A DNA stretch of 64,000 nt from IMG/VR virus record IMGVR_UViG_3300036770_004723, positions 1 to 64,000 of that record; one strand, written 5' to 3'. How positions within the stretch are numbered: the stretch's first letter is position 1; each line of letters begins with the position of its first letter. Of this stretch, positions 9,038-63,660 are shown piece by piece. The notes below the pieces were generated by a model. It had not been told where the DNA came from. It did not search any database and worked only from the letters and a program-made list of their open reading frames with translations. A program made the translations under genes and the position numbers.

Positions 9038-10231
9038 TTAAATAGCTACATCAGCTTTGATCGCTGCACAATGTTCGTATTTTACAACCCGAACATTTGC
9101 CATTGTTAAATTCTTAAGATCATTCTTTTGTGTAGGTCCAACACCTATTGTAAACATGTAAGGCATTTCCTTACAACTATGTAAGTTGTTTGCTTGTTTT
9201 TGTAAGGCTTCTACATGATTTTCATAAATATGAATATCTCCAAAACTAAGTATCAAACGATTTGGTATCATTTGTGTAACCGCACAAAATAATGCGGTTA
9301 GTGCTGCATAGCTGGCTATGTTAAACGGCTGACCAAGAAAAATATCACTGGAGCGCATGTAGAGATGTGTATTTAACAAACGTGTTCTAGGTACAATGTG
9401 ATCTCTATAGCTATCAAGCAAGTCCAGAACTTCTTCATCATTTAAAGCGGAAAATTGGGTTTCCGTGATATCAAGTTTAATGCCATTTAAATATGTTGTG
9501 CCTTCAATAGTGTAAACATTGAACATTTTTAAATCACGTACACGGTAAATAGGGTCTGTTGTATCAACAGTACCGAATTGAAATAATGTATGGCAAGCTG
9601 GCAAGCTCTGTCTTCCCATTGCAGCTTGCTTTGTAGGATGATCATCTGTTGGTAATACAGCTGGATTCCAACTATCTACTATTAAACGGCGACAATTTGG
9701 TTTTAAAAGTAACGTATTTAAAACCTCTTGAATCTGATCAATGTTACGTGTGTAAACTGATCCAGTTTTAAAACCTGCTACAAATGTATATCCATTGTTT
9801 TTGCAGAACTGTGTTTTTTCGAACCAGTAAGGATCTTTGTTATAGATAATAGTAGTATCTTCACGGTTACGCCACTGCTGTCCATAAATAGGACCCAGAT
9901 CACCATTTTTATTGGCCCAGCCATCCCAAATGTGTACGTCAGCATCTAACAGTGGTTGAATATTTGTATGTCCATTGAGCATCCAAAAAAGTTCTTCAAA
10001 CATAGGTCTGATATAAACTTTCTTAGTGGAAAGCAGTGGAAATCCCGCCATTAAATGTGTTTCTAGCTGTGTACCAAAATATTTATAGGTATCGAATTCA
10101 GTTCTATTACCACTGAATGAACCTAATCGCATTATTTTATCCGCCATTTCCAGATAATCTGTATCAAGATCGTTAAGTCCGTTGTCCGCTTGATTACCTA
10201 AGATCAAAGGATTGGCTTTTGTAATATTCAT
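9038..10231 (-). CDS. thyA: Thymidylate synthase (ThyA type) with insertions
   Basis: GDLGPIYGQQWR, catalytic LPACH, YMRSSDIFLGQPFNIASY and GDIHIYENH motifs. Confidence 0.95.
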   Translation of the reverse strand: MNITKANPLILGNQADNGLNDLDTDYLEMADKIMRLGSFSGNRTEFDTYKYFGTQLETHLMAGFPLLSTKKVYIRPMFEELFWMLNGHTNIQPLLDADVHIWDGWANKNGDLGPIYGQQWRNREDTTIIYNKDPYWFEKTQFCKNNGYTFVAGFKTGSVYTRNIDQIQEVLNTLLLKPNCRRLIVDSWNPAVLPTDDHPTKQAAMGRQSLPACHTLFQFGTVDTTDPIYRVRDLKMFNVYTIEGTTYLNGIKLDITETQFSALNDEEVLDLLDSYRDHIVPRTRLLNTHLYMRSSDIFLGQPFNIASYAALTALFCAVTQMIPNRLILSFGDIHIYENHVEALQKQANNLHSCKEMPYMFTIGVGPTQKNDLKNLTMANVRVVKYEHCAAIKADVAI

Positions 10232-10641
10232 TATTTAGTTTCCTTATACTGAGAATGAATTGGATGATGTAAAAACAATTGAGTTGTATTACTTACAACG
10301 CCTGTGAATAGTGTAAGAAGTTGGTGGATCTTTGAATTAAATTCTGGATTATTATCCAATACCATTTGATTTAACTGTAACTCTATTTCAATCAAATGTT
10401 CTTCTCTTAAATTTTCTCCAAGTTCCTGTATTTTTCTGTTGAATGCTACAGCATACGCATCAGTTTCAACATAAGGAAACTCAAGAACGTTACTATCTAT
10501 TTCCAAAAATAAACCAAGTCCGTTACCTGTATTAGGTGAAGTAAAGGTAATAAACGCACTGGACTCAAAAGATATTAAGGCACTTTTGGTTAAAGGCGTT
10601 TCATAAGCGATTTGAAAAAAATTTGGCACAATTTTTATCAT
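10231..10641 (-). CDS. Hypothetical protein
   Basis: 136 aa ORF, translationally coupled to thyA (TAATG). Confidence 0.7.
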   Translation of the reverse strand: MIKIVPNFFQIAYETPLTKSALISFESSAFITFTSPNTGNGLGLFLEIDSNVLEFPYVETDAYAVAFNRKIQELGENLREEHLIEIELQLNQMVLDNNPEFNSKIHQLLTLFTGVVSNTTQLFLHHPIHSQYKETK

Positions 10642-11116
10642 GAGTTTCCTCTCTACATTCCATTAGATGTTGTTTGTTTATTCTGGCTAGAATTTTATAA
10701 TACGATAAAGGTCTGGCATTTTCTTCGCCTGCTATAACTGCATCTACCATATTAGCGTAAAATAATTTACCGGTTCTTCCTGCATTAGAGTCATAAATAG
10801 TATAACTGTCTTCGTTGCCTTCGACCAATATGCAATCCCAAACATAGTCATCTGCGTCAACATATAAGTTTAAATTCGGCACATAATAAATATAAATAAA
10901 TTCTTTATCCAACTTGTGTCCGTAAGTTGTAGGGCATTCAAACTGGATCCCTAATTCATCTAATATTTCTACGATCTTAGGGCGATTTGATTTAGATAAA
11001 GCAGATCCTAGAAAAACTATTAATAGGTCGATAGTTTTTAAGTTTTTACCTAATAACATAGCTAAACAGGCTAAATGTGAATCATGCTCATTGGTCTGTT
11101 GTACCAAGTTGATCAT
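10601..11116 (-). CDS. Peptidase C39-like fold protein, probably catalytically dead
   Basis: QQTNEHDSHLACLAMLL matches the C39 start with Ser at the catalytic Cys; WDCILVEG...IYDSNAG lacks the catalytic His. Confidence 0.5.
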   Translation of the reverse strand: MINLVQQTNEHDSHLACLAMLLGKNLKTIDLLIVFLGSALSKSNRPKIVEILDELGIQFECPTTYGHKLDKEFIYIYYVPNLNLYVDADDYVWDCILVEGNEDSYTIYDSNAGRTGKLFYANMVDAVIAGEENARPLSYYKILARINKQHLMECREETHDKNCAKFFSNRL

Positions 11117-11148: not shown

Positions 11149-11158
11149 ATATTTACAG
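11149..11158 (-). promoter_or_regulatory. Candidate phage promoter motif CTGTAAATA, copy 1
   Basis: Intergenic, ~33 nt upstream of the ATG at 11116, just past a terminator. Confidence 0.5.
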
Positions 11159-11223: not shown

Positions 11224-11595
11224 CTATTTCTTGATCTTAGCGTATTCTTCTCGAACTTTCTTTTGAAGTGGTTCAAGAAGATCATGAAGCGTGTTCCACT
11301 CTTCTTCAGTATCTGCTTTCAGTATTTGACAATGAACTCTTGATACAGCAATTAAGGCCATCATTGTATCTCTTTCATGGTCAACTGCATATTTACCGTT
11401 AAGTGCTACCGTATATTCACGCACAGAACGTTCGGCAATGTCTAACCAACGTTTACGTAATTTAGGATCTGGCTCAAAAGTATAGACAGCTTCCATGTAC
11501 TGATCAGCAAAAGATTTAGGTACTATAGATTCCTTCTTTTTCTTTTTAGGGAAAGTCAAGATCTTACCCGAAGACATGCTGATATTAATCTTCAT
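11224..11595 (-). CDS. MKIxISxS-family protein
   Basis: 123 aa, starts MKINISMSS; TAAGGAAAAACATG start context. Confidence 0.8.
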   Translation of the reverse strand: MKINISMSSGKILTFPKKKKKESIVPKSFADQYMEAVYTFEPDPKLRKRWLDIAERSVREYTVALNGKYAVDHERDTMMALIAVSRVHCQILKADTEEEWNTLHDLLEPLQKKVREEYAKIKK

Positions 11596-11603
11596 GTTTT
11601 TCC

Positions 11604-12095
11604 TTAAGATTTCTTCATAATAAATTTAGCCAGTTTTTGGTAGCTATCGTCTTGCATCTTTTTCTTTTCTACTAGCTTACTTTCTTTTTGCATTTTTAGC
11701 AACAGTTTATCTATTTCAGCCAATTCTTTACGTAATTGCTTTTGCTTTTCTTTTAAAGCTTTTACTTTAGCTGATTGTATAATTTTATCTGTATTTTCTG
11801 AATTTCTATCTTCACTAGTTTTCTTAGGTTTTTCGTAAGGTAAAAATTTGAACTGTTTACCTGCACCTATAGAATTAATATCAATTCCTTTTGCTTTAAC
11901 GTTGGTTTTATTTCCAAACGCATTTTTAATCATTACCTTTTGACCACGTAAGGCAACAACTTTAACAGGTTTCTCGTGAGTTTCCCATTGATTTACTGTC
12001 TTGCCTTGTTTGATAAATTGTTTTCTTTCACGTAGAAGGTAAACGCCATCTAATTCAGGCAATTTACTGGCGCTAGTTGAGATCAATACTTTCAT
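11604..12095 (-). CDS. MKIxISxS-family protein, very Lys-rich
   Basis: 163 aa, starts MKVLISTSA; basic coiled-coil C-terminus. Confidence 0.8.
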   Translation of the reverse strand: MKVLISTSASKLPELDGVYLLRERKQFIKQGKTVNQWETHEKPVKVVALRGQKVMIKNAFGNKTNVKAKGIDINSIGAGKQFKFLPYEKPKKTSEDRNSENTDKIIQSAKVKALKEKQKQLRKELAEIDKLLLKMQKESKLVEKKKMQDDSYQKLAKFIMKKS

Positions 12096-12397
12096 ATTTC
12101 TTCCTTAAACACAACATTCCAATCCCACTCAAGCTGAGATCGATCAGGATCTGTGTCATAGTAAGCAGCTACAACATAAACTAAGTCACCAATGTCACCG
12201 CTAATTTCAAAGGTTTTATCCACTTGTCTAAGTGACTTAGGCATTAATGTTATTAACACAGGCTTTTTAAGTTCAGCACTTAATCTATTGATCTCTTCTT
12301 GTATTTCACTTGTTGATGTATTAGGTTTTGCCTTTACACTAGCAACAAATGTTTTTGAAGAATATTTAGTGGATGAAACACTGATCTTAATTTTCAT
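12092..12397 (-). CDS. MKIxISxS-family protein
   Basis: 101 aa, starts MKIKISVSS. Confidence 0.8.
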   Translation of the reverse strand: MKIKISVSSTKYSSKTFVASVKAKPNTSTSEIQEEINRLSAELKKPVLITLMPKSLRQVDKTFEISGDIGDLVYVVAAYYDTDPDRSQLEWDWNVVFKEEI

Positions 12398-12893
12398 AGG
12401 TTATACCAACTTCACTTAAAGTATCTGTTAGCATTTTATAACGTTTAAAATCTTGAATGTCTTCAGCTTGACCTATCTTAGCAAAAATTCTATTACAGAC
12501 AGAAGCTAATCTTTGCGCCAAATACCATTTAGCTTCATTAGCTGCTGTTACATCTTCTTTAGTGACTATTTCCAACATTTTCTTGAAAGCAAGATTGCCT
12601 ATTTTTAAAAGTGTTGGATCTATAGAAGAATAATGACTTTTATCATCGGCACCCTGAAATTTCAATTCACCCGATTTTTTGTTCAATAGGTCTTCCATTA
12701 TCTGATAAGACGTTCTAATAGCGCCATGAGGCTTTGCATTAAACATTCGGGTCAAAGTAAGACAAGAATCTATTATTGTCTTGTAGTGACTGTCGTACTG
12801 TTTAGTTTTCTTGAAATAAGTTTTAATAACCTTATTCAAAGTTTTTAAATTTATGTTATCGTTTGCTGCACTTAAACTGATCAAGATCTTCAT
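12387..12893 (-). CDS. MKIxISxS-family protein
   Basis: 168 aa, starts MKILISLSA; C-terminus (KMLTDTLSEVGITY) resembles that of 12890-13393 (KTLRDTLSAEGIFY). Confidence 0.8.
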   Translation of the reverse strand: MKILISLSAANDNINLKTLNKVIKTYFKKTKQYDSHYKTIIDSCLTLTRMFNAKPHGAIRTSYQIMEDLLNKKSGELKFQGADDKSHYSSIDPTLLKIGNLAFKKMLEIVTKEDVTAANEAKWYLAQRLASVCNRIFAKIGQAEDIQDFKRYKMLTDTLSEVGITYEN

Positions 12894-12905
12894 TGTTTTT
12901 CCTTA
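12872..12905. repeat. 34-bp perfect direct repeat, copy 1
   Basis: TTAAACTGATCAAGATCTTCATTGTTTTTCCTTA, identical at 13372-13405; covers RBS plus first codons. Confidence 0.95.
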
Positions 12906-13393
12906 ATATAAAATATGCCTTCAGCGGATAAAGTATCACGCAAGGTTTTATGGTGTCCGTATTTAGCTTCAGGATCAAATTTATGGTTGATCAGACTTTG
13001 CGCTGAATTATTTAAAGCAGCCAATCGATCAAATAAAGCTAAATGTTTTTTAGCTTCTTTTAAATTTATTCCTTTAAATTTCTTTAGCTCTGATTTAAGT
13101 TTTGCAAACGCTTTATATGAAAGATCTTGTTCATAAGTTTTAACCGCTGGATAACGTCGTTTTTCACTGACATTATCGTCTGCTGCATTTTCTGCCGCAA
13201 AGATCGCATCATCTAAATTGTCTGCTTTATCAGGTGCATTCAAAAATTTTGTCATAGCCAAAAAGAACTGGCTCATTCCAATATTTGGGATTAAGGCTGA
13301 GTCACATACTTCATGAATTAAAGTATTAAGTTTTTGAATTTTTTGTTCGGTAGACATAACATTACCAGAATTTAAACTGATCAAGATCTTCAT
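12890..13393 (-). CDS. MKIxISxS-family protein
   Basis: 167 aa, starts MKILISLNS; bracketed by the 34-bp repeats. Confidence 0.8.
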   Translation of the reverse strand: MKILISLNSGNVMSTEQKIQKLNTLIHEVCDSALIPNIGMSQFFLAMTKFLNAPDKADNLDDAIFAAENAADDNVSEKRRYPAVKTYEQDLSYKAFAKLKSELKKFKGINLKEAKKHLALFDRLAALNNSAQSLINHKFDPEAKYGHHKTLRDTLSAEGIFYIKEKQ

Positions 13394-13405
13394 TGTTTTT
13401 CCTTA
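13372..13405. repeat. 34-bp perfect direct repeat, copy 2
   Basis: Identical to 12872-12905, exactly 500 bp away. Confidence 0.95.
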
Positions 13406-14425
13406 GTTGTTGCCTGCCCAATCAGCAATAGTTATATGTTCTACGCTAATTGTTTTACCTGTGATCTTGTGGGTCGCACGTAATTCAGCAACAAAACGAC
13501 CTTCAATAGCGGCAGTGCCTGCAACTGGCTGAGCTAATACAGTACGGAACCATCCAAGTTGCGTGCTATTTTGTACACAACGTTTGTCTGCATCACCTTT
13601 GCTATCAATTACGTTTGGAACAGCTACGCCAAGATCAGTTAATAGAGTCATTGCGTATTTTGAAACAGTTGTTTCGTCACGAATTAATTTCCAGACAAGA
13701 CTGTTATTCTTGGATCCGTCTTTGTTAGTGTACATCACAAGTTCAACATCATACATTTGCGTAATGTCTGTGATCTCTTCGTGTGTACTACCTATACTCC
13801 AAGTAACATTCCATGCTTCTGTTGCATTGGCCAATGTTAAAGTGGAAACGTTTTGTTCAATGCTTCGACCTTGATCCCATTGAGATCTTCTGTGAGAAGT
13901 TAATGCAAGTTCAATAAAATCATTGTGTACAATACTATATTTATTTCCAGGGATCCCTGTACCAACGAACAGAGTACCGTTAGGTAATAAAAAACTTGTA
14001 TTTAAAGCAGAAGCAAATTTACTAATTACTTCACCTTCATTTATCTCAGGCATTGGAATAGGATCTACTAAATTCGCTTCTTTTACAATTTCTTCTATTA
14101 CATCAGAGTAAGTTTCAACTATATATGGTTGAACTGCATTGTAAATAGACTGTTCTTGGTTAAAACCTAAATTGTGGTATTCTGCCACTTGCTGCCAATT
14201 ATTAATAACAGCATTCTTTAATCCATCTAGATCGGACTCTGTGATTTCGGGAAAAATTTCAGATTGATCAATTAAAATAGTTTCAGGTTTTCCATTTACC
14301 AAACGTACAACTTCTAGATTTGGATTTGAAAGTTTAACAATTTTAATACCATCGACGTCATAGCTCCCGTTACGAATAAAGCGATGAAAATCACTAAAGA
14401 TAATACTAGCAAAATTAAGTTTCAT
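13403..14425 (-). CDS. Hypothetical protein, possibly virion-associated (beta-rich C-terminal half)
   Basis: 340 aa ORF, AAGGA RBS; acidic linker then beta-rich domain. Confidence 0.65.
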   Translation of the reverse strand: MKLNFASIIFSDFHRFIRNGSYDVDGIKIVKLSNPNLEVVRLVNGKPETILIDQSEIFPEITESDLDGLKNAVINNWQQVAEYHNLGFNQEQSIYNAVQPYIVETYSDVIEEIVKEANLVDPIPMPEINEGEVISKFASALNTSFLLPNGTLFVGTGIPGNKYSIVHNDFIELALTSHRRSQWDQGRSIEQNVSTLTLANATEAWNVTWSIGSTHEEITDITQMYDVELVMYTNKDGSKNNSLVWKLIRDETTVSKYAMTLLTDLGVAVPNVIDSKGDADKRCVQNSTQLGWFRTVLAQPVAGTAAIEGRFVAELRATHKITGKTISVEHITIADWAGNN

Positions 14426-14460: not shown

Positions 14461-15036
14461 TTATCTATATGACTTGAGAATGTCTAAGGACAATATTTTT
14501 TCTTTATAAAGAACATAGTCATAGATTCCTTTAAAAAGTTTAGGTAGCTCTACATCTAAAGAATCTGCTTTATTGGATTTAAATGCAATGTGAGAAGCTT
14601 TTTTAGCTAAAGTGTCTGCGCGTTCATTACCGAAAATACCTGAATGTCCTCGAACTTTATTGAATGTAATTATTCCAGCATCGTAAAGATTTCCAAGTAC
14701 TATAATAAGATCTCTGTTTTTTACCTCGGTTCCTGTGGAACTTATCCAGTTGCTCAATTTCCATCCTGAACGCCACTTTGTAACAGCATCAATAGTATAT
14801 TGGCTGTCTGTGTGTATGCAGATTTGTTTTTCACCACTTATATATTTCAGTGATCTGATTACGGCCATTAAACAACCTAATAATTCCATTTGATTGCTTG
14901 TAGCATGTAAAAAACTAACGCTCATACATCTGTAACGTTTTTTATTACCAAACATCCGTTCACAGTAAATTCCCAATCCTGAGGGACCTGGATTGTTTAT
15001 CGAAGATCCATCTGAGTATACATCAATTACTTTCAT
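14461..15036 (-). CDS. rnhA: Ribonuclease HI
   Basis: YSDGSSINNPGPSG, SNQMEL, TDSQY, KNRDL and VRGHSGIFGNERADTLA motifs. Confidence 0.95.
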   Translation of the reverse strand: MKVIDVYSDGSSINNPGPSGLGIYCERMFGNKKRYRCMSVSFLHATSNQMELLGCLMAVIRSLKYISGEKQICIHTDSQYTIDAVTKWRSGWKLSNWISSTGTEVKNRDLIIVLGNLYDAGIITFNKVRGHSGIFGNERADTLAKKASHIAFKSNKADSLDVELPKLFKGIYDYVLYKEKILSLDILKSYR

Positions 15037-15067
15037 ACTGAATTCCTTTACACTAATTTATTACTAT

Positions 15068-15078
15068 AGTATTTACAG
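15068..15078 (-). promoter_or_regulatory. Candidate phage promoter motif CTGTAAATACT, copy 2
   Basis: In the divergent gap, ~32 nt upstream of the RNase H ATG. Confidence 0.5.
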
Positions 15079-21926: not shown

Positions 21927-21999
21927 GTAATTACATAGATTGATGTGAGTAGTACACTAATTTATATCAAAGTTTTATATTTAATAGGAAATTCTTAAA

Positions 22000-58550: not shown

Positions 58551-59000
58551 TTATATTTGATCCAAAACATCCTTTAAATACCTATCCTGAGTTAAGACTA
58601 CATGGTTACAGTTTTCTTGGTCGAAGCAGCCTTCAATAAATGATTCCCAATTTTTATCCATCATGTTGACAAAAGCTTGAGGCGATCCGCGATCTACGTA
58701 ACGCATCAAATATTCTTGCTTACACTCAACGTTTGGGTAAATTAAAGTAAATGGCAGACCTAACTGAACTAGACCTTGACGTACATCACTGTGTGAGGAA
58801 ACAAGAATAATATCAAAGTTTCCTTCTGTATAAAGTGCTGATATGTGTGCCAAATAGTTTTGAGGAAAATTACTTTTATCCCATTTACTGCTATCGCTGT
58901 CAGCAACATTTAGATCTGAATTGGCTTTTAACCAACTTTTACCTATACCAGGAAAACCTGATATGATGGTAGGTGATTTTGAACTTATACTAATTTTCAT
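58551..59000 (-). CDS. P-loop kinase-like phage protein (starts MKISISS)
   Basis: IISGFPGIGKS Walker A, DSDSSKWDK..FPQNY, LVSSH..VR pattern. Confidence 0.75.
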   Translation of the reverse strand: MKISISSKSPTIISGFPGIGKSWLKANSDLNVADSDSSKWDKSNFPQNYLAHISALYTEGNFDIILVSSHSDVRQGLVQLGLPFTLIYPNVECKQEYLMRYVDRGSPQAFVNMMDKNWESFIEGCFDQENCNHVVLTQDRYLKDVLDQI

Positions 59001-63649: not shown

Positions 63650-63660
63650 AGTATTTACAG
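63650..63660 (-). promoter_or_regulatory. Candidate phage promoter motif CTGTAAATACT, copy 3
   Basis: Intergenic, ~31 nt upstream of the exonuclease ATG. Confidence 0.5.

What the first reader, a model, noticed from the sequence alone, without database searches (positions are those of the whole stretch)
11224..13393. Five mostly unrelated proteins share an MK(I/V)xISx(S/N) N-terminal tag
Seen: MKINISMSS, MKVLISTSA, MKIKISVSS, MKILISLSA and MKILISLNS start five consecutive genes whose bodies are mostly dissimilar and often very basic. The distant P-loop kinase (58551-59000) starts MKISISS with a similar AAAACAATGAAAATT context. Established: T4 internal proteins use a short N-terminal capsid-targeting sequence. 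Inference: a sorting address, for example for packaging into the head and ejection into the host, that can be grafted onto arbitrary cargo.
Basis: partly seen in the sequence, partly recalled or inferred. Interest (0 to 1): 0.7.

Follow-up and report, generated by a model that had tools for sequence, protein, structure and literature searches.

The report
Shared N-terminal tag, jumbo phage proteins
A 286-kb jumbo phage and its relatives put the same roughly ten-residue N-terminal tag (M-K-I-x-I-S-x-S-A) on dozens of otherwise unrelated, mostly basic proteins and enzymes, which most likely works like phage T4's capsid-targeting sequence to load cargo into the virus head, although packaging itself has not been shown.

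Summary
Five consecutive minus-strand genes (11224-13393) start M-K-[IV]-x-I-S-x-[SN]-[SA]. The whole 286,584-bp genome has 9 strict matches, against about 0.05-0.3 expected. A composition-matched jumbo phage, PA5oct, has none.

The tag is selected at the protein level: both serines are encoded about equally by AGY and TCN codons. It is conserved in orthologs while the linkers vary. AlphaFold2 predicts it as a disordered appendage on a confident helical body.

Across this jumbo-phage clade (Lu11/PaBG/NCTB group) it sits on at least 17 BLAST-unrelated families. These include NAD-ligase, a topoisomerase-IB-like protein, KMPT-N proteins, a P-loop kinase and ADP-ribosyltransferases. In the ligase and kinase families some orthologs have it and others lack it.

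Tagged genes cluster around a prohead protease whose model best matches T4 gp21 (Z 9.9). Of 17 tagged or tag-like G000 proteins, 14 have pI above 9.

Best reading (confidence about 0.6): a T4-CTS-like prohead-targeting tag for internal and ejected proteins, unrelated in sequence to T4's. Packaging, cleavage and the receptor are not shown; the docking test gave no answer. I class it as a new variant of a known kind.

The parts
12890..13393 (-). Tagged gene 1 of the array, 167 aa, MKILISLNSG. The tag is codons 1-9 (13367-13393). The body is an all-helical domain of unknown function.
   Evidence: ORF. Homologs at 53-68% identity keep MKILISL invariant. AF2 pLDDT 86, with residues 1-10 below 50. 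No PDB fold match.
12387..12893 (-). Tagged gene 2, 168 aa, MKILISLSAA (tag 12867-12893), pI 9.3. It shares an identical 34-nt 5' end with gene 1.
   Evidence: Orthologs: MRIFLSLSA (L002), MRIFVSVSS (L003), MKILVSLSAK (G001).
12092..12397 (-). Tagged gene 3, 101 aa, MKIKISVSST (tag 12371-12397), acidic body (pI 5.4).
   Evidence: Orthologs are 77% identical, but the tag-body linker is 5 residues shorter. G002 ortholog MRIFVSLSAE.
11604..12095 (-). Tagged gene 4, 163 aa, MKVLISTSAS (tag 12069-12095), very basic (pI 10.0, 24.5% K+R). Absent from the arrays of L002 and L003, present in G001.
   Evidence: No family or reliable look-alike.
11224..11595 (-). Tagged gene 5, 123 aa, MKINISMSSG (tag 11569-11595), pI 9.25.
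   Evidence: Orthologs: MRINISVSS in L003 and MMKILVSVSA in G001; absent from L002.
13403..14425 (-). Untagged 340-aa gene directly upstream in the same operon. Homolog of PA5oct gp383, a virion structural protein found by ESI-MS/MS.
   Evidence: tblastn at 33% identity, E 5e-24, and the PA5oct annotation. Syntenic in L002, L003, L004 and G001.
14461..15036 (-). RNase H gene heading the operon that contains the array.
   Evidence: Pfam RNase_H 1.1e-30. Gaps or overlaps of at most 35 nt down to 11224.
15071..15078 (-). CTGTAAAT promoter-like motif 42 nt upstream of the RNase H start. It is the likely promoter of the operon. The same motif precedes replication-type genes genome-wide.
   Evidence: k-mer enrichment of about 25-fold in upstream regions; site list.
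11151..11158 (-). Next copy of the CTGTAAAT motif, in the 107-nt gap after the array. It marks the start of the next transcription unit (the 171-aa C39-like gene).
58551..59000 (-). P-loop kinase-like gene, 149 aa, MKISISSKSPT then IISGFPGIGKS. The weak tag (58974-59000) is an extension in front of the P-loop strand.
   Evidence: phrog_4182 1.5e-57. The G001 ortholog has a clear tag plus a longer linker; the G002 ortholog is untagged.

Best explanation
The M-K-[ILV]-[LF]-[ILV]-S-[L/E]-S-[A/S]-x-K N-terminus is a portable, unstructured targeting peptide. It marks proteins for incorporation into the assembling prohead of this jumbo-phage lineage, in the way the capsid-targeting sequence (CTS) marks T4 internal proteins.

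Proposed steps:
1. Tagged proteins are made. These are small basic DNA-associating proteins plus enzymes such as ADP-ribosyltransferase, kinase, ligase and topoisomerase-IB-like proteins.
2. The exposed N-terminal strand docks onto a conserved component of the prohead interior: scaffold/core, protease or shell.
3. The cargo is enclosed.
4. The gp21-fold prohead protease may remove the tag.
5. The cargo stays with the packaged DNA and is ejected into the host at infection, where it would act in early take-over or counter-defence.

Shown here:
- the tag is a discrete class selected at the protein level;
- it is a disordered appendage;
- it is portable between unrelated bodies;
- it is genomically associated with the head-assembly genes;
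- the protease has the gp21/assemblin fold.

Inferred: targeting to the prohead, cleavage, ejection and the role of the cargo.
For: 1. Discrete and non-random. G000 has 9 strict tags against 0.05-0.3 expected, and PSSM scores are bimodal. With an independent PSSM, G000 has 8, G001 5, G002 1 and composition-matched PA5oct 0. In 61 related loci, 21 of 1169 genes carry the strict tag, against 1 hit in 5 x 1169 internal-offset tests; all 21 are on the protease strand.

2. Selected at the protein level. Each conserved Ser is encoded by AGY (33) and TCN (30) codons over 63 distinct tags. The tag occurs at GC contents from 35% to 53%. In G000-G001 orthologs the tag averages 66% identity and the body 49%. 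MKILISL is invariant in orthologs that are 53-68% identical overall.

3. Appendage. In the AF2 model, residues 1-10 have pLDDT below 50 on a body with pLDDT 86. Linker length varies between orthologs.

4. Portable. It occurs on 17 strict, or about 48 loosely defined, BLAST-unrelated families. Cargo includes NAD-ligase, a topoisomerase-IB-like protein, an LRV/HEAT protein and KMPT-N proteins. It also includes an ART-PolyVal protein, MKILISLAKS-NIWYHGS, in the closest relative, and a probable ART in G000 itself (226942). Ligase and kinase orthologs occur with and without the tag.

5. Head context. The G000 tag-like cluster at 185.8-191.7 kb lies between the protease (184059-184853) and the major head protein (196596-197684). 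The arrangement is the same in NCTB, L084, G001 and G002. The protease family carries a conserved tag-like S-x-S-F motif near its own N-terminus, with F15 invariant.

6. The protease model best matches T4 gp21: Z 9.9, rmsd 2.8 A, 139 of 166 residues. Maturation proteolysis of virion proteins is documented in clade member PaBG (PMC7412058).

7. Cargo properties resemble T4 internal proteins. 14 of 17 have pI above 9, against 30% genome-wide, Fisher p 7e-6. Array content differs between relatives. The array is co-operonic with a homolog of a PA5oct virion protein.

8. Precedents. T4 internal proteins share only a CTS (PMC3012670). T4 Alt, an ART, is packaged and injected (PMC5512222). The N-terminal 30 residues of P1 DarB target a reporter to the capsid (PMC9024508).
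Against: - There is no direct evidence that any tagged protein is in a virion. The lineages with arrays are metagenomic only.
- The docking test against the major head protein, the 230-aa head protein and the protease gave no answer: score 0.00 with a poorly folded partner. This is uninformative rather than negative.
- No conserved cleavage motif follows the tag, and Glu is no closer to it than in untagged proteins.
- The window array lies behind the CTGTAAATA motif shared with replication-type genes, not the TAATTTAT motif found upstream of sheath and baseplate genes. It may therefore be expressed before prohead assembly.
- One conserved tagged protein (KMPT-N, AD1 gp132) is encoded between tail-tube paralogs, so the destination could be another part of the virion.
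- The ligase and the kinase could equally act in the cytoplasm.
Confidence: 0.6

Rival explanations
1. The motif is an assembly or processing element rather than an address. It would be a short N-terminal strand that lets scaffold/core proteins co-assemble with each other, or that serves as the recognition site of the prohead protease. In that case it marks morphogenetic proteins, not cargo destined for delivery into the host.
For: - The densest clusters lie between the protease and the major head protein and include coiled-coil, scaffold-like proteins (187115 and 188033).
- The protease family itself has a conserved S-x-S-F N-terminal motif.
- 15 of 95 tags read phi-S-E-S, which fits the (L/I)-x-E rule of T4 gp21 as I recall it.
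- PaBG virion proteins are cleaved at multiple sites.
Against: - The tag also sits on enzymes with no plausible scaffold role: ART-PolyVal, kinase, ligase and a topoisomerase-IB-like protein.
- It also sits on genes far from the head module, such as the window array.
- Most tags have no Glu, and no downstream cleavage motif is conserved.
- This rival overlaps the main model, since the T4 CTS is both an address and a cleavage substrate.
Confidence: 0.15
2. The tag is an N-terminal degron or chaperone-recognition signal, for example for a ClpX-type or another AAA+ machine, perhaps the conserved 634-762-aa 'ATPase' next to the head genes. It would time the removal or unfolding of these proteins.
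For: - Met-basic-hydrophobic-hydrophobic-hydrophobic N-termini resemble one class of ClpX N-terminal recognition motifs (from my own memory, not tested).
- A large conserved protein annotated as an ATPase (phrog_20988) sits between the tagged cluster and the major head protein.
- The tag is exposed and disordered.
Against: - Many tags have a polar residue at position 4 (N, K, S, Q). The invariant features are the two serines, which the remembered ClpX motif does not require.
- A degron does not explain the concentration around head genes, the basic cargo or the ART parallel.
- No Clp genes were looked for in G000.
Confidence: 0.07
3. The shared N-terminus reflects common descent (a diverged paralog family) or repeated recombination at a conserved 5' cassette boundary, with no function of its own.
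For: - Genes 12387 and 12890 share an identical 34-nt 5' end, are of equal length and have similar C-terminal ends.
- 187115 and 188033 are paralogs (E 7e-7).
- 189955 and 191820 are paralogs.
Against: - The tag is attached to domains of independent origin: NAD-ligase, topoisomerase IB, ART, P-loop kinase, KMPT-N and HEAT/LRV.
- It is absent from some orthologs of the ligase and the kinase.
- It is more conserved than the bodies, and is conserved through synonymous and AGY/TCN codon changes. That pattern requires selection on the peptide.
Confidence: 0.05
4. The conservation is a translation-initiation or mRNA feature: an A-rich, unstructured 5' coding region that starts with Lys-Ile codons.
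For: - Similar AAGGAAAAACAATGAA(A/G)AT contexts in several window genes.
- MK starts are common genome-wide, 75 of 380 genes.
Against: - The serines use all six codons, in both the AGY and TCN families.
- The motif persists from 35% to 53% GC.
- PA5oct, with the same base composition, has none.
- The peptide pattern extends to residues 9-11.
Confidence: 0.03
5. The tag is an export or membrane-association signal, or the first strand of a TIR/flavodoxin-like fold (MK-I-F-I-S-x-S resembles the start of many TIR domains).
For: Superficial resemblance of MKIFISxS to the N-terminal strand of TIR-like domains (from my own memory), and the N-terminal position typical of signal peptides.
Against: - The sequence has no hydrophobic core of 7 or more residues, no lipobox Cys and no AxA site.
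- The modelled tagged protein is all-helical with the tag disordered.
- No TIR or flavodoxin family hit for any tagged protein.
Confidence: 0.03

Closest known systems
Phage T4 capsid-targeting sequence (CTS) of internal proteins IPI, IPII, IPIII and Alt, removed by the prohead protease gp21
   Same: - A tag of about 10 residues at the extreme N-terminus is the only thing shared by otherwise diverse, mostly basic small proteins (T4 side: PMC3012670).
- An ADP-ribosyltransferase is among the cargo: T4 Alt (PMC5512222), matched here by ART-PolyVal in L084 and a probable ART in G000.
- The prohead protease has the gp21 fold.
- The content of the loci varies between related phages.
   Different: - The consensus (MKILISLSA-K) bears no resemblance to the T4 CTS as I remember it (MKTYQEFIAE).
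- The major head protein and the protease are not detectable members of the T4 Gp23 and S77 families by sequence.
- No cleavage site after Glu is conserved.
- The cargo range is wider: ligase, topoisomerase-IB-like, kinase, KMPT-N.
- Packaging has not been demonstrated here.
Phage P1 DarB N-terminal packaging signal (Dar anti-restriction system)
   Same: An N-terminal signal is sufficient to direct a heterologous protein into a myovirus capsid. The cargo is counter-defence proteins injected with the DNA (PMC9024508). Clade members carry P1-like morphogenesis genes, annotated as PmgG-like.
   Different: The P1 signal needs more than 9 and at most 30 residues, and the Dar proteins share no consensus N-terminus. 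Here a sharp 9-11-residue consensus is shared by many proteins.
Propeptides of ejection and inner-body proteins of phiKZ-like and SPN3US-like giant phages
   Same: Jumbo phages with many head-internal proteins, processed by a gp21-like prohead protease (abstracts of PMC5694885 and PMC7411985; details from my own knowledge).
   Different: As I recall, those propeptides are long and not a shared short motif, with cleavage at (S/A/G)-x-E. The Lu11/PaBG/NCTB group is phylogenetically separate from phiKZ-like phages (PMC7412058).
Polyvalent and MuF-linked effector proteins of phages (Iyer et al. 2017)
   Same: The domains seen on the tag (ART-PolyVal, KMPT-N) are those of proteins predicted to be packaged and injected with the DNA (PMC5512222; Pfam hits).
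   Different: In those proteins the effectors are fused into giant multidomain polypeptides or to MuF or portal domains. Here single-domain effectors each carry a short common tag, which is a modular alternative.
Encapsulin cargo-loading peptides
   Same: A short, disordered terminal peptide of alternating hydrophobic and small residues directs diverse cargo to the interior of an HK97-fold shell (from my own knowledge; comparison by concept only).
   Different: These peptides are usually C-terminal, have a different consensus, and belong to bacterial nanocompartments rather than a virus. No binding to the G000 shell protein could be shown.

Membership tests
T4-type CTS / internal-protein system | A short sequence at the extreme N-terminus is the only feature shared by otherwise unrelated proteins. 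| tested here: met
   Bodies are BLAST-unrelated. The consensus is confined to residues 1-11.
T4-type CTS / internal-protein system | Sequence similarity of the tag to the T4 CTS. | not tested
As I remember it, the T4 CTS reads MKTYQEFIAE, which shares only the MK start with MKILISLSA. On that basis I would expect this feature not to be met.
T4-type CTS / internal-protein system | A gp21-type prohead serine protease is encoded. | tested here: met
   By structure: T4 gp21 (5jbl) is the top match at Z 9.9, rmsd 2.8 A. His131, Ser188 and His215 are invariant. By sequence the Pfam S77 model finds nothing.
T4-type CTS / internal-protein system | The tag is cleaved off by the prohead protease (after Glu in T4). 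| tested here: inconclusive
   No conserved motif and no Glu enrichment after the tag. 15 of 95 tags contain phi-S-E-S. Cleavage itself cannot be tested with these tools.
T4-type CTS / internal-protein system | Tagged proteins are present inside the virion and ejected with the DNA. | not testable with these tools
   No virion proteome exists for any phage with the array. Support is contextual only.
T4-type CTS / internal-protein system | The cargo is predominantly basic, and the loci vary between related phages. | tested here: met
   14 of 17 have pI above 9, against 30% genome-wide, p 7e-6. The arrays differ between G000, L002, L003 and G001.
T4-type CTS / internal-protein system | The tag is sufficient to target a foreign protein to the capsid. 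| not testable with these tools
   Natural grafts onto ligase, kinase and ART suggest portability. The docking test gave no answer.
ART-PolyVal ADP-ribosyltransferase (PF18760), for G000 226942-227457 | A significant match to the family profile. | tested here: inconclusive
   No Pfam hit at E up to 0.1. But BLASTP to the Pfam-listed ART-PolyVal protein of L084 gives E 2e-5. The atlas features score is 0.94 with 190 of 256 shared and 9 of 10 top hits in that family, and TM is 0.56.
Sec or lipoprotein signal peptide | A hydrophobic core of about 7-15 residues followed by an AxA site or a lipobox Cys. | tested here: not met
   Read directly from the sequences: the hydrophobic residues alternate with polar ones, a polar linker follows, and there is no Cys.
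TIR/flavodoxin-like fold with MK-phi-phi-phi-S first strand | The N-terminal strand is an integral part of an alpha/beta domain. | tested here: not met
   The 167-aa tagged protein is all-helical with residues 1-10 disordered. No such family was hit. Only one tagged protein was modelled.

The most novel reading that the evidence does not exclude
This jumbo-phage clade (the Lu11/PaBG/NCTB 'Lupandier' group and its many uncultured relatives) uses its own universal, roughly 10-residue loading address, evolved independently of T4's CTS. With it the phages equip their heads with an interchangeable arsenal of injected enzymes and DNA-binding proteins: ADP-ribosyltransferases, kinase, ligase, topoisomerase-IB-like and KMPT-N proteins. 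If so, simply reading N-termini would list the ejected proteome of any member, and the tag would be a ready-made handle for loading foreign proteins into jumbo-phage capsids.
Probability: 0.5. Interest if true: 0.75.

Novelty: new variant of a known kind. Interest (0 to 1): 0.66.

Why it matters
Only a few capsid-targeting signals are known: the T4 CTS and P1 DarB, and the latter has no consensus. Internal and ejected proteins of jumbo phages are otherwise identified only by proteomics of cultured isolates.

A sharp, sequence-readable tag would allow three things. The set of proteins a phage injects could be predicted directly from metagenomic genomes. Candidate early take-over and counter-defence effectors could be picked out; the tagged ADP-ribosyltransferases resemble T4 Alt and AcrIF11-type enzymes. 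And there would be a second, independent system for studying how short peptides direct cargo into HK97-fold shells.

It would also show convergent evolution of the same logistic solution in two unrelated myovirus lineages that share only the protease fold. The motif strings were not found in the searchable literature.

Tried and rejected
1. PA5oct as a close relative. A neighbouring gene matched a PA5oct virion protein, so I fetched the whole genome. But only 9 of 380 genes match and PA5oct has no tag. It served as a composition-matched negative control instead.

2. Direct family searches. Pfam, PHROGs and NCBIfam on the five proteins found nothing above threshold. tblastn against GenBank phages found nothing for the 167-aa protein.

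3. Docking. A rebuilt job using only search-returned proteins ran but gave 'no answer'.

4. Cleavage motif. An anchored profile and the distance to the first Glu showed nothing.

5. Fold of the 167-aa body. No PDB match. The atlas gave no usable lead for 11604 or 217063.

6. My loose motif. It turned out to have about 2% background at N-termini even in PA5oct. I therefore treat the '73 of 1169' and '48 families' figures as upper bounds and rely on the strict and PSSM counts.

7. Literature on virion proteomes of cultured clade members. Nothing accessible covers a tagged protein.

8. Sigma-70 and terminator scans of the array were at shuffle level.
Full report
**What is there**

The window is the first 64 kb of a single-contig, 286,584-bp IMG/VR virus genome (G000, GC 34.6%). 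Five tightly packed minus-strand ORFs lie at 11224-13393. They encode proteins of 123, 163, 101, 168 and 167 aa that begin MKINISMSS, MKVLISTSA, MKIKISVSS, MKILISLSA and MKILISLNS. With the first 10 residues removed, they show no BLAST similarity to one another. None matches a Pfam, PHROG or NCBIfam family. The kinase-like gene 58551-59000 (phrog_4182) starts MKISISSKS.

**Is it more than chance?**

Among 380 called genes, the expected number matching MK[IVL]x[IVL]S under position independence is 0.34, or 0.05 if position 8 must be S or N. Nine (or eight) are observed. A PSSM separates ten genes (score above 14) from all the rest (next score 0.9). An unbiased all-against-all comparison of N-termini recovers this group as the dominant cluster.

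Because a PSSM trained on G000 is circular, I retrained it on 19 tags from independent related loci. That gives:

| Genome | Genes with PSSM score 10 or more | Strict-pattern matches |
|---|---|---|
| G000 | 8 | 9 |
| G001 | 5 | 8 |
| G002 | 1 | 4 |
| PA5oct (33% GC control) | 0 (best score -1.4) | 0 |

A looser motif that I used midway has about 2% background at N-termini even in PA5oct. Figures based on it are therefore upper bounds.

Outside the window, G000 carries the tag at 187115, 217063, 224425 and 226942. It also carries it at two genes whose starts my caller missed, 188033 and 124758; the latter is confirmed by a tagged G001 ortholog.

**Protein level, not DNA level**

Over 63 distinct tags, each conserved serine is encoded 33 times by AGY codons and 30 times by TCN codons. 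These two codon families cannot interconvert by a single substitution. The tag is found in contigs from 35% to 53% GC.

In orthologs from Logan assemblies at 53-68% identity, MKILISL is invariant. In eight G000-G001 ortholog pairs the tag averages 66% identity and the body 49%. Linker length between tag and body changes between orthologs.

**An appendage**

AlphaFold2 on the 167-aa protein with its homologs gives a confident six-helix domain (mean pLDDT 86, pTM 0.80). Residues 1-10, exactly the tag, are the only segment below pLDDT 50 and have no secondary structure. The fold has no PDB match.

**Which phage, and where the tags sit**

- The major head protein (G000 196596-197684, phrog_2522) is 42-49% identical to those of phage NCTB, Pseudomonas Lu11, Dickeya AD1/JA11 and Erwinia Y3-type phages. 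This is the 'Lupandier group' of PMC7412058.
- G000's head region reads, in order: a 264-aa homolog of Lu11's 'head maturation protease' (43% identical); a run of genes starting MKITIRMFS, MKMKIKVRLISTSAS, MKIFVSQSAE, MKVFISHSAE, MKKLTITLVSTS, MKITLVSTSKSS, MIISISSRTS and MKIKLFISES; then genes of 543 and 762 aa; a 230-aa virion structural protein; and the major head protein.
- NCTB has MKVFLSESKN, MLISISLGKK, MKIISISARS and MKIVSISAQK at the same place.
- The closest relative (protease 87% identical) has eleven such genes in a row.
- Using a protease alignment I fetched 65 related IMG/VR loci. In the 61 distinct ones, 21 of 1169 genes carry the strict tag, against one hit in five internal-offset controls. 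All 21 are on the protease strand. They fall into 17 BLAST-unrelated families in 12 loci.
- The complete relatives G001 (319.5 kb) and G002 (261 kb) show the same genome-wide pattern. They also have a syntenic array next to RNase H and the baseplate genes, as in the window.

**Cargo**

- Pfam identifies tagged NAD-dependent DNA ligases (three lineages), a topoisomerase-IB-like protein, an LRV/HEAT-repeat protein and KMPT-N-domain proteins.
- In the closest relative, a 161-aa ART-PolyVal ADP-ribosyltransferase begins MKILISLAKS-NIWYHGS, so the tag abuts the catalytic domain.
- G000's own 226942 protein (MRIFISLSSS-IYFRG...) is probably a divergent member of the same family. BLASTP to that protein gives E 2e-5. 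The atlas features score is 0.94 with 9 of 10 top hits in ART-PolyVal or AcrIF11 families, and TM is 0.56. There is no Pfam hit.
- Ligase orthologs occur with the tag as a 12-25-residue N-terminal extension, or without it.
- The kinase is tagged in G000 and G001 and untagged in G002.
- Fourteen of 17 tagged or tag-like G000 proteins have pI above 9, against 30% genome-wide (Fisher p 7e-6).

**The protease**

The AF2 model (pLDDT 85) best matches T4 gp21: Z 9.9, rmsd 2.8 A, 139 of 166 residues. Herpesvirus assemblins follow at Z 5-7. The Pfam S77 model does not detect it by sequence. His131, Ser188 and His215 are invariant. The protease family has a conserved tag-like phi-S-x-S-F motif in its own disordered N-terminus. 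In PaBG the major capsid protein loses about 20% of its mass, and several virion proteins are cleaved at multiple sites.

**Interpretation**

The anatomy parallels T4. [quoted passage not shown] The packaged ADP-ribosyltransferase Alt is injected with the DNA (PMC5512222), and gp21 processes the core.

I therefore take the tag to be a prohead-targeting peptide for internal and ejected proteins (confidence 0.6). Its portability, disorder, selection and head-gene context are shown. Targeting, cleavage and ejection are inferred.

**Weak points**

- No proteome exists for a phage with the array.
- The docking job gave no answer.
- No cleavage motif follows the tag.
- The window array's operon (RNase H, a 340-aa homolog of a PA5oct virion protein, then the five genes) is headed by a CTGTAAATA motif. 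That motif otherwise precedes replication-type genes. It is not the TAATTTAT motif found upstream of sheath and baseplate genes.
- A conserved tagged KMPT-N protein is encoded among tail-tube genes.

**Rivals**

The rivals considered are: a scaffold co-assembly or protease-recognition element, a degron, paralogy or a recombination cassette, an initiation-context effect, and a signal peptide or first strand of an alpha/beta fold. Each is weighed in its own section. The last three are contradicted by tests made here.

**Novelty**

The concept is known from the T4 CTS and the P1 DarB signal. The consensus, the clade, the breadth of cargo and the number of tagged genes are not: the motif strings are absent from the searchable literature. 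I class it as a new variant of a known kind.

Noticed in passing
window 12860-12905 and 13360-13405: The two adjacent tagged genes 12387-12893 and 12890-13393 share an identical 34-nt stretch covering the RBS, the start codon and the tag (TAAGGAAAAACAATGAAGATCTTGATCAGTTTAA), although their bodies are BLAST-unrelated. This could be a site of recombination or gene conversion for swapping cassettes.
   Followed up: partly
window 11151-11158, 15071-15078 and 63653-63660 (minus strand); 15054-15061 and 21958-21965 (plus strand): There are two distinct promoter-like motifs. AAACTGTAAATA lies about 40 nt upstream of replication-type genes and is about 25-fold enriched in upstream regions. TAATTTAT lies about 35-40 nt upstream of sheath and baseplate genes. 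The two face opposite ways in the short divergent region between the RNase H and PAAR/baseplate genes.
   Followed up: partly
window 9038-10231: A 397-aa thymidylate-synthase-like protein, longer than usual. Its orthologs in relatives carry PF00303 and are followed by an N6/N4 DNA methyltransferase. This hints at a modified DNA base.
   Followed up: no
window 10601-11116: A 171-aa C39-peptidase-like gene (phrog_4049; Pfam C39 below its cut-off) directly follows the array in G000. It is replaced by unrelated genes in L002 and L003.
   Followed up: no
window 35000-56000: A long run of paralogous fibre-like genes (phrog_17152, 16348 and 17517 recur) interspersed with HNH-endonuclease-like genes (phrog_24148, 21918). 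This suggests a diversified receptor-binding module.
   Followed up: no
G000 184059-184853 (L012:4059-4853): The gp21-fold prohead protease family has invariant Cys198, Cys201, Cys213 and His215, which may form a zinc site. It also has a conserved phi-S-x-S-F motif in its disordered N-terminus that resembles the tag.
   Followed up: partly
G000 181920-183515, 189295-189915 and 191332-191715; L035:8563-9567: In several head-region proteins the tag is followed by a second conserved module, W..KKLS...Q..Y.K.HP.SKY, of unknown function.
   Followed up: no
G000 162625-164283 and 198978-200597: There are two paralogous tail-sheath genes, as in the two-component sheath reported for clade member PaBG (cited in PMC7412058).
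   Followed up: no
L044:19793-20467 (Dickeya AD1 gp132); G000 201865-202512: A conserved KMPT-N-domain protein with a tag-like N-terminus (MLILLSESARK in AD1, MLISISVTPS in G000) is encoded between the two tail-tube paralogs, away from the head genes.
   Followed up: partly
protein P0134 (homolog of G000 195862-196554): One homolog of the 230-aa head protein is labelled by NCBI as coming from a Bacteroidales MAG. This is a weak hint at the host range of part of this clade.
   Followed up: no
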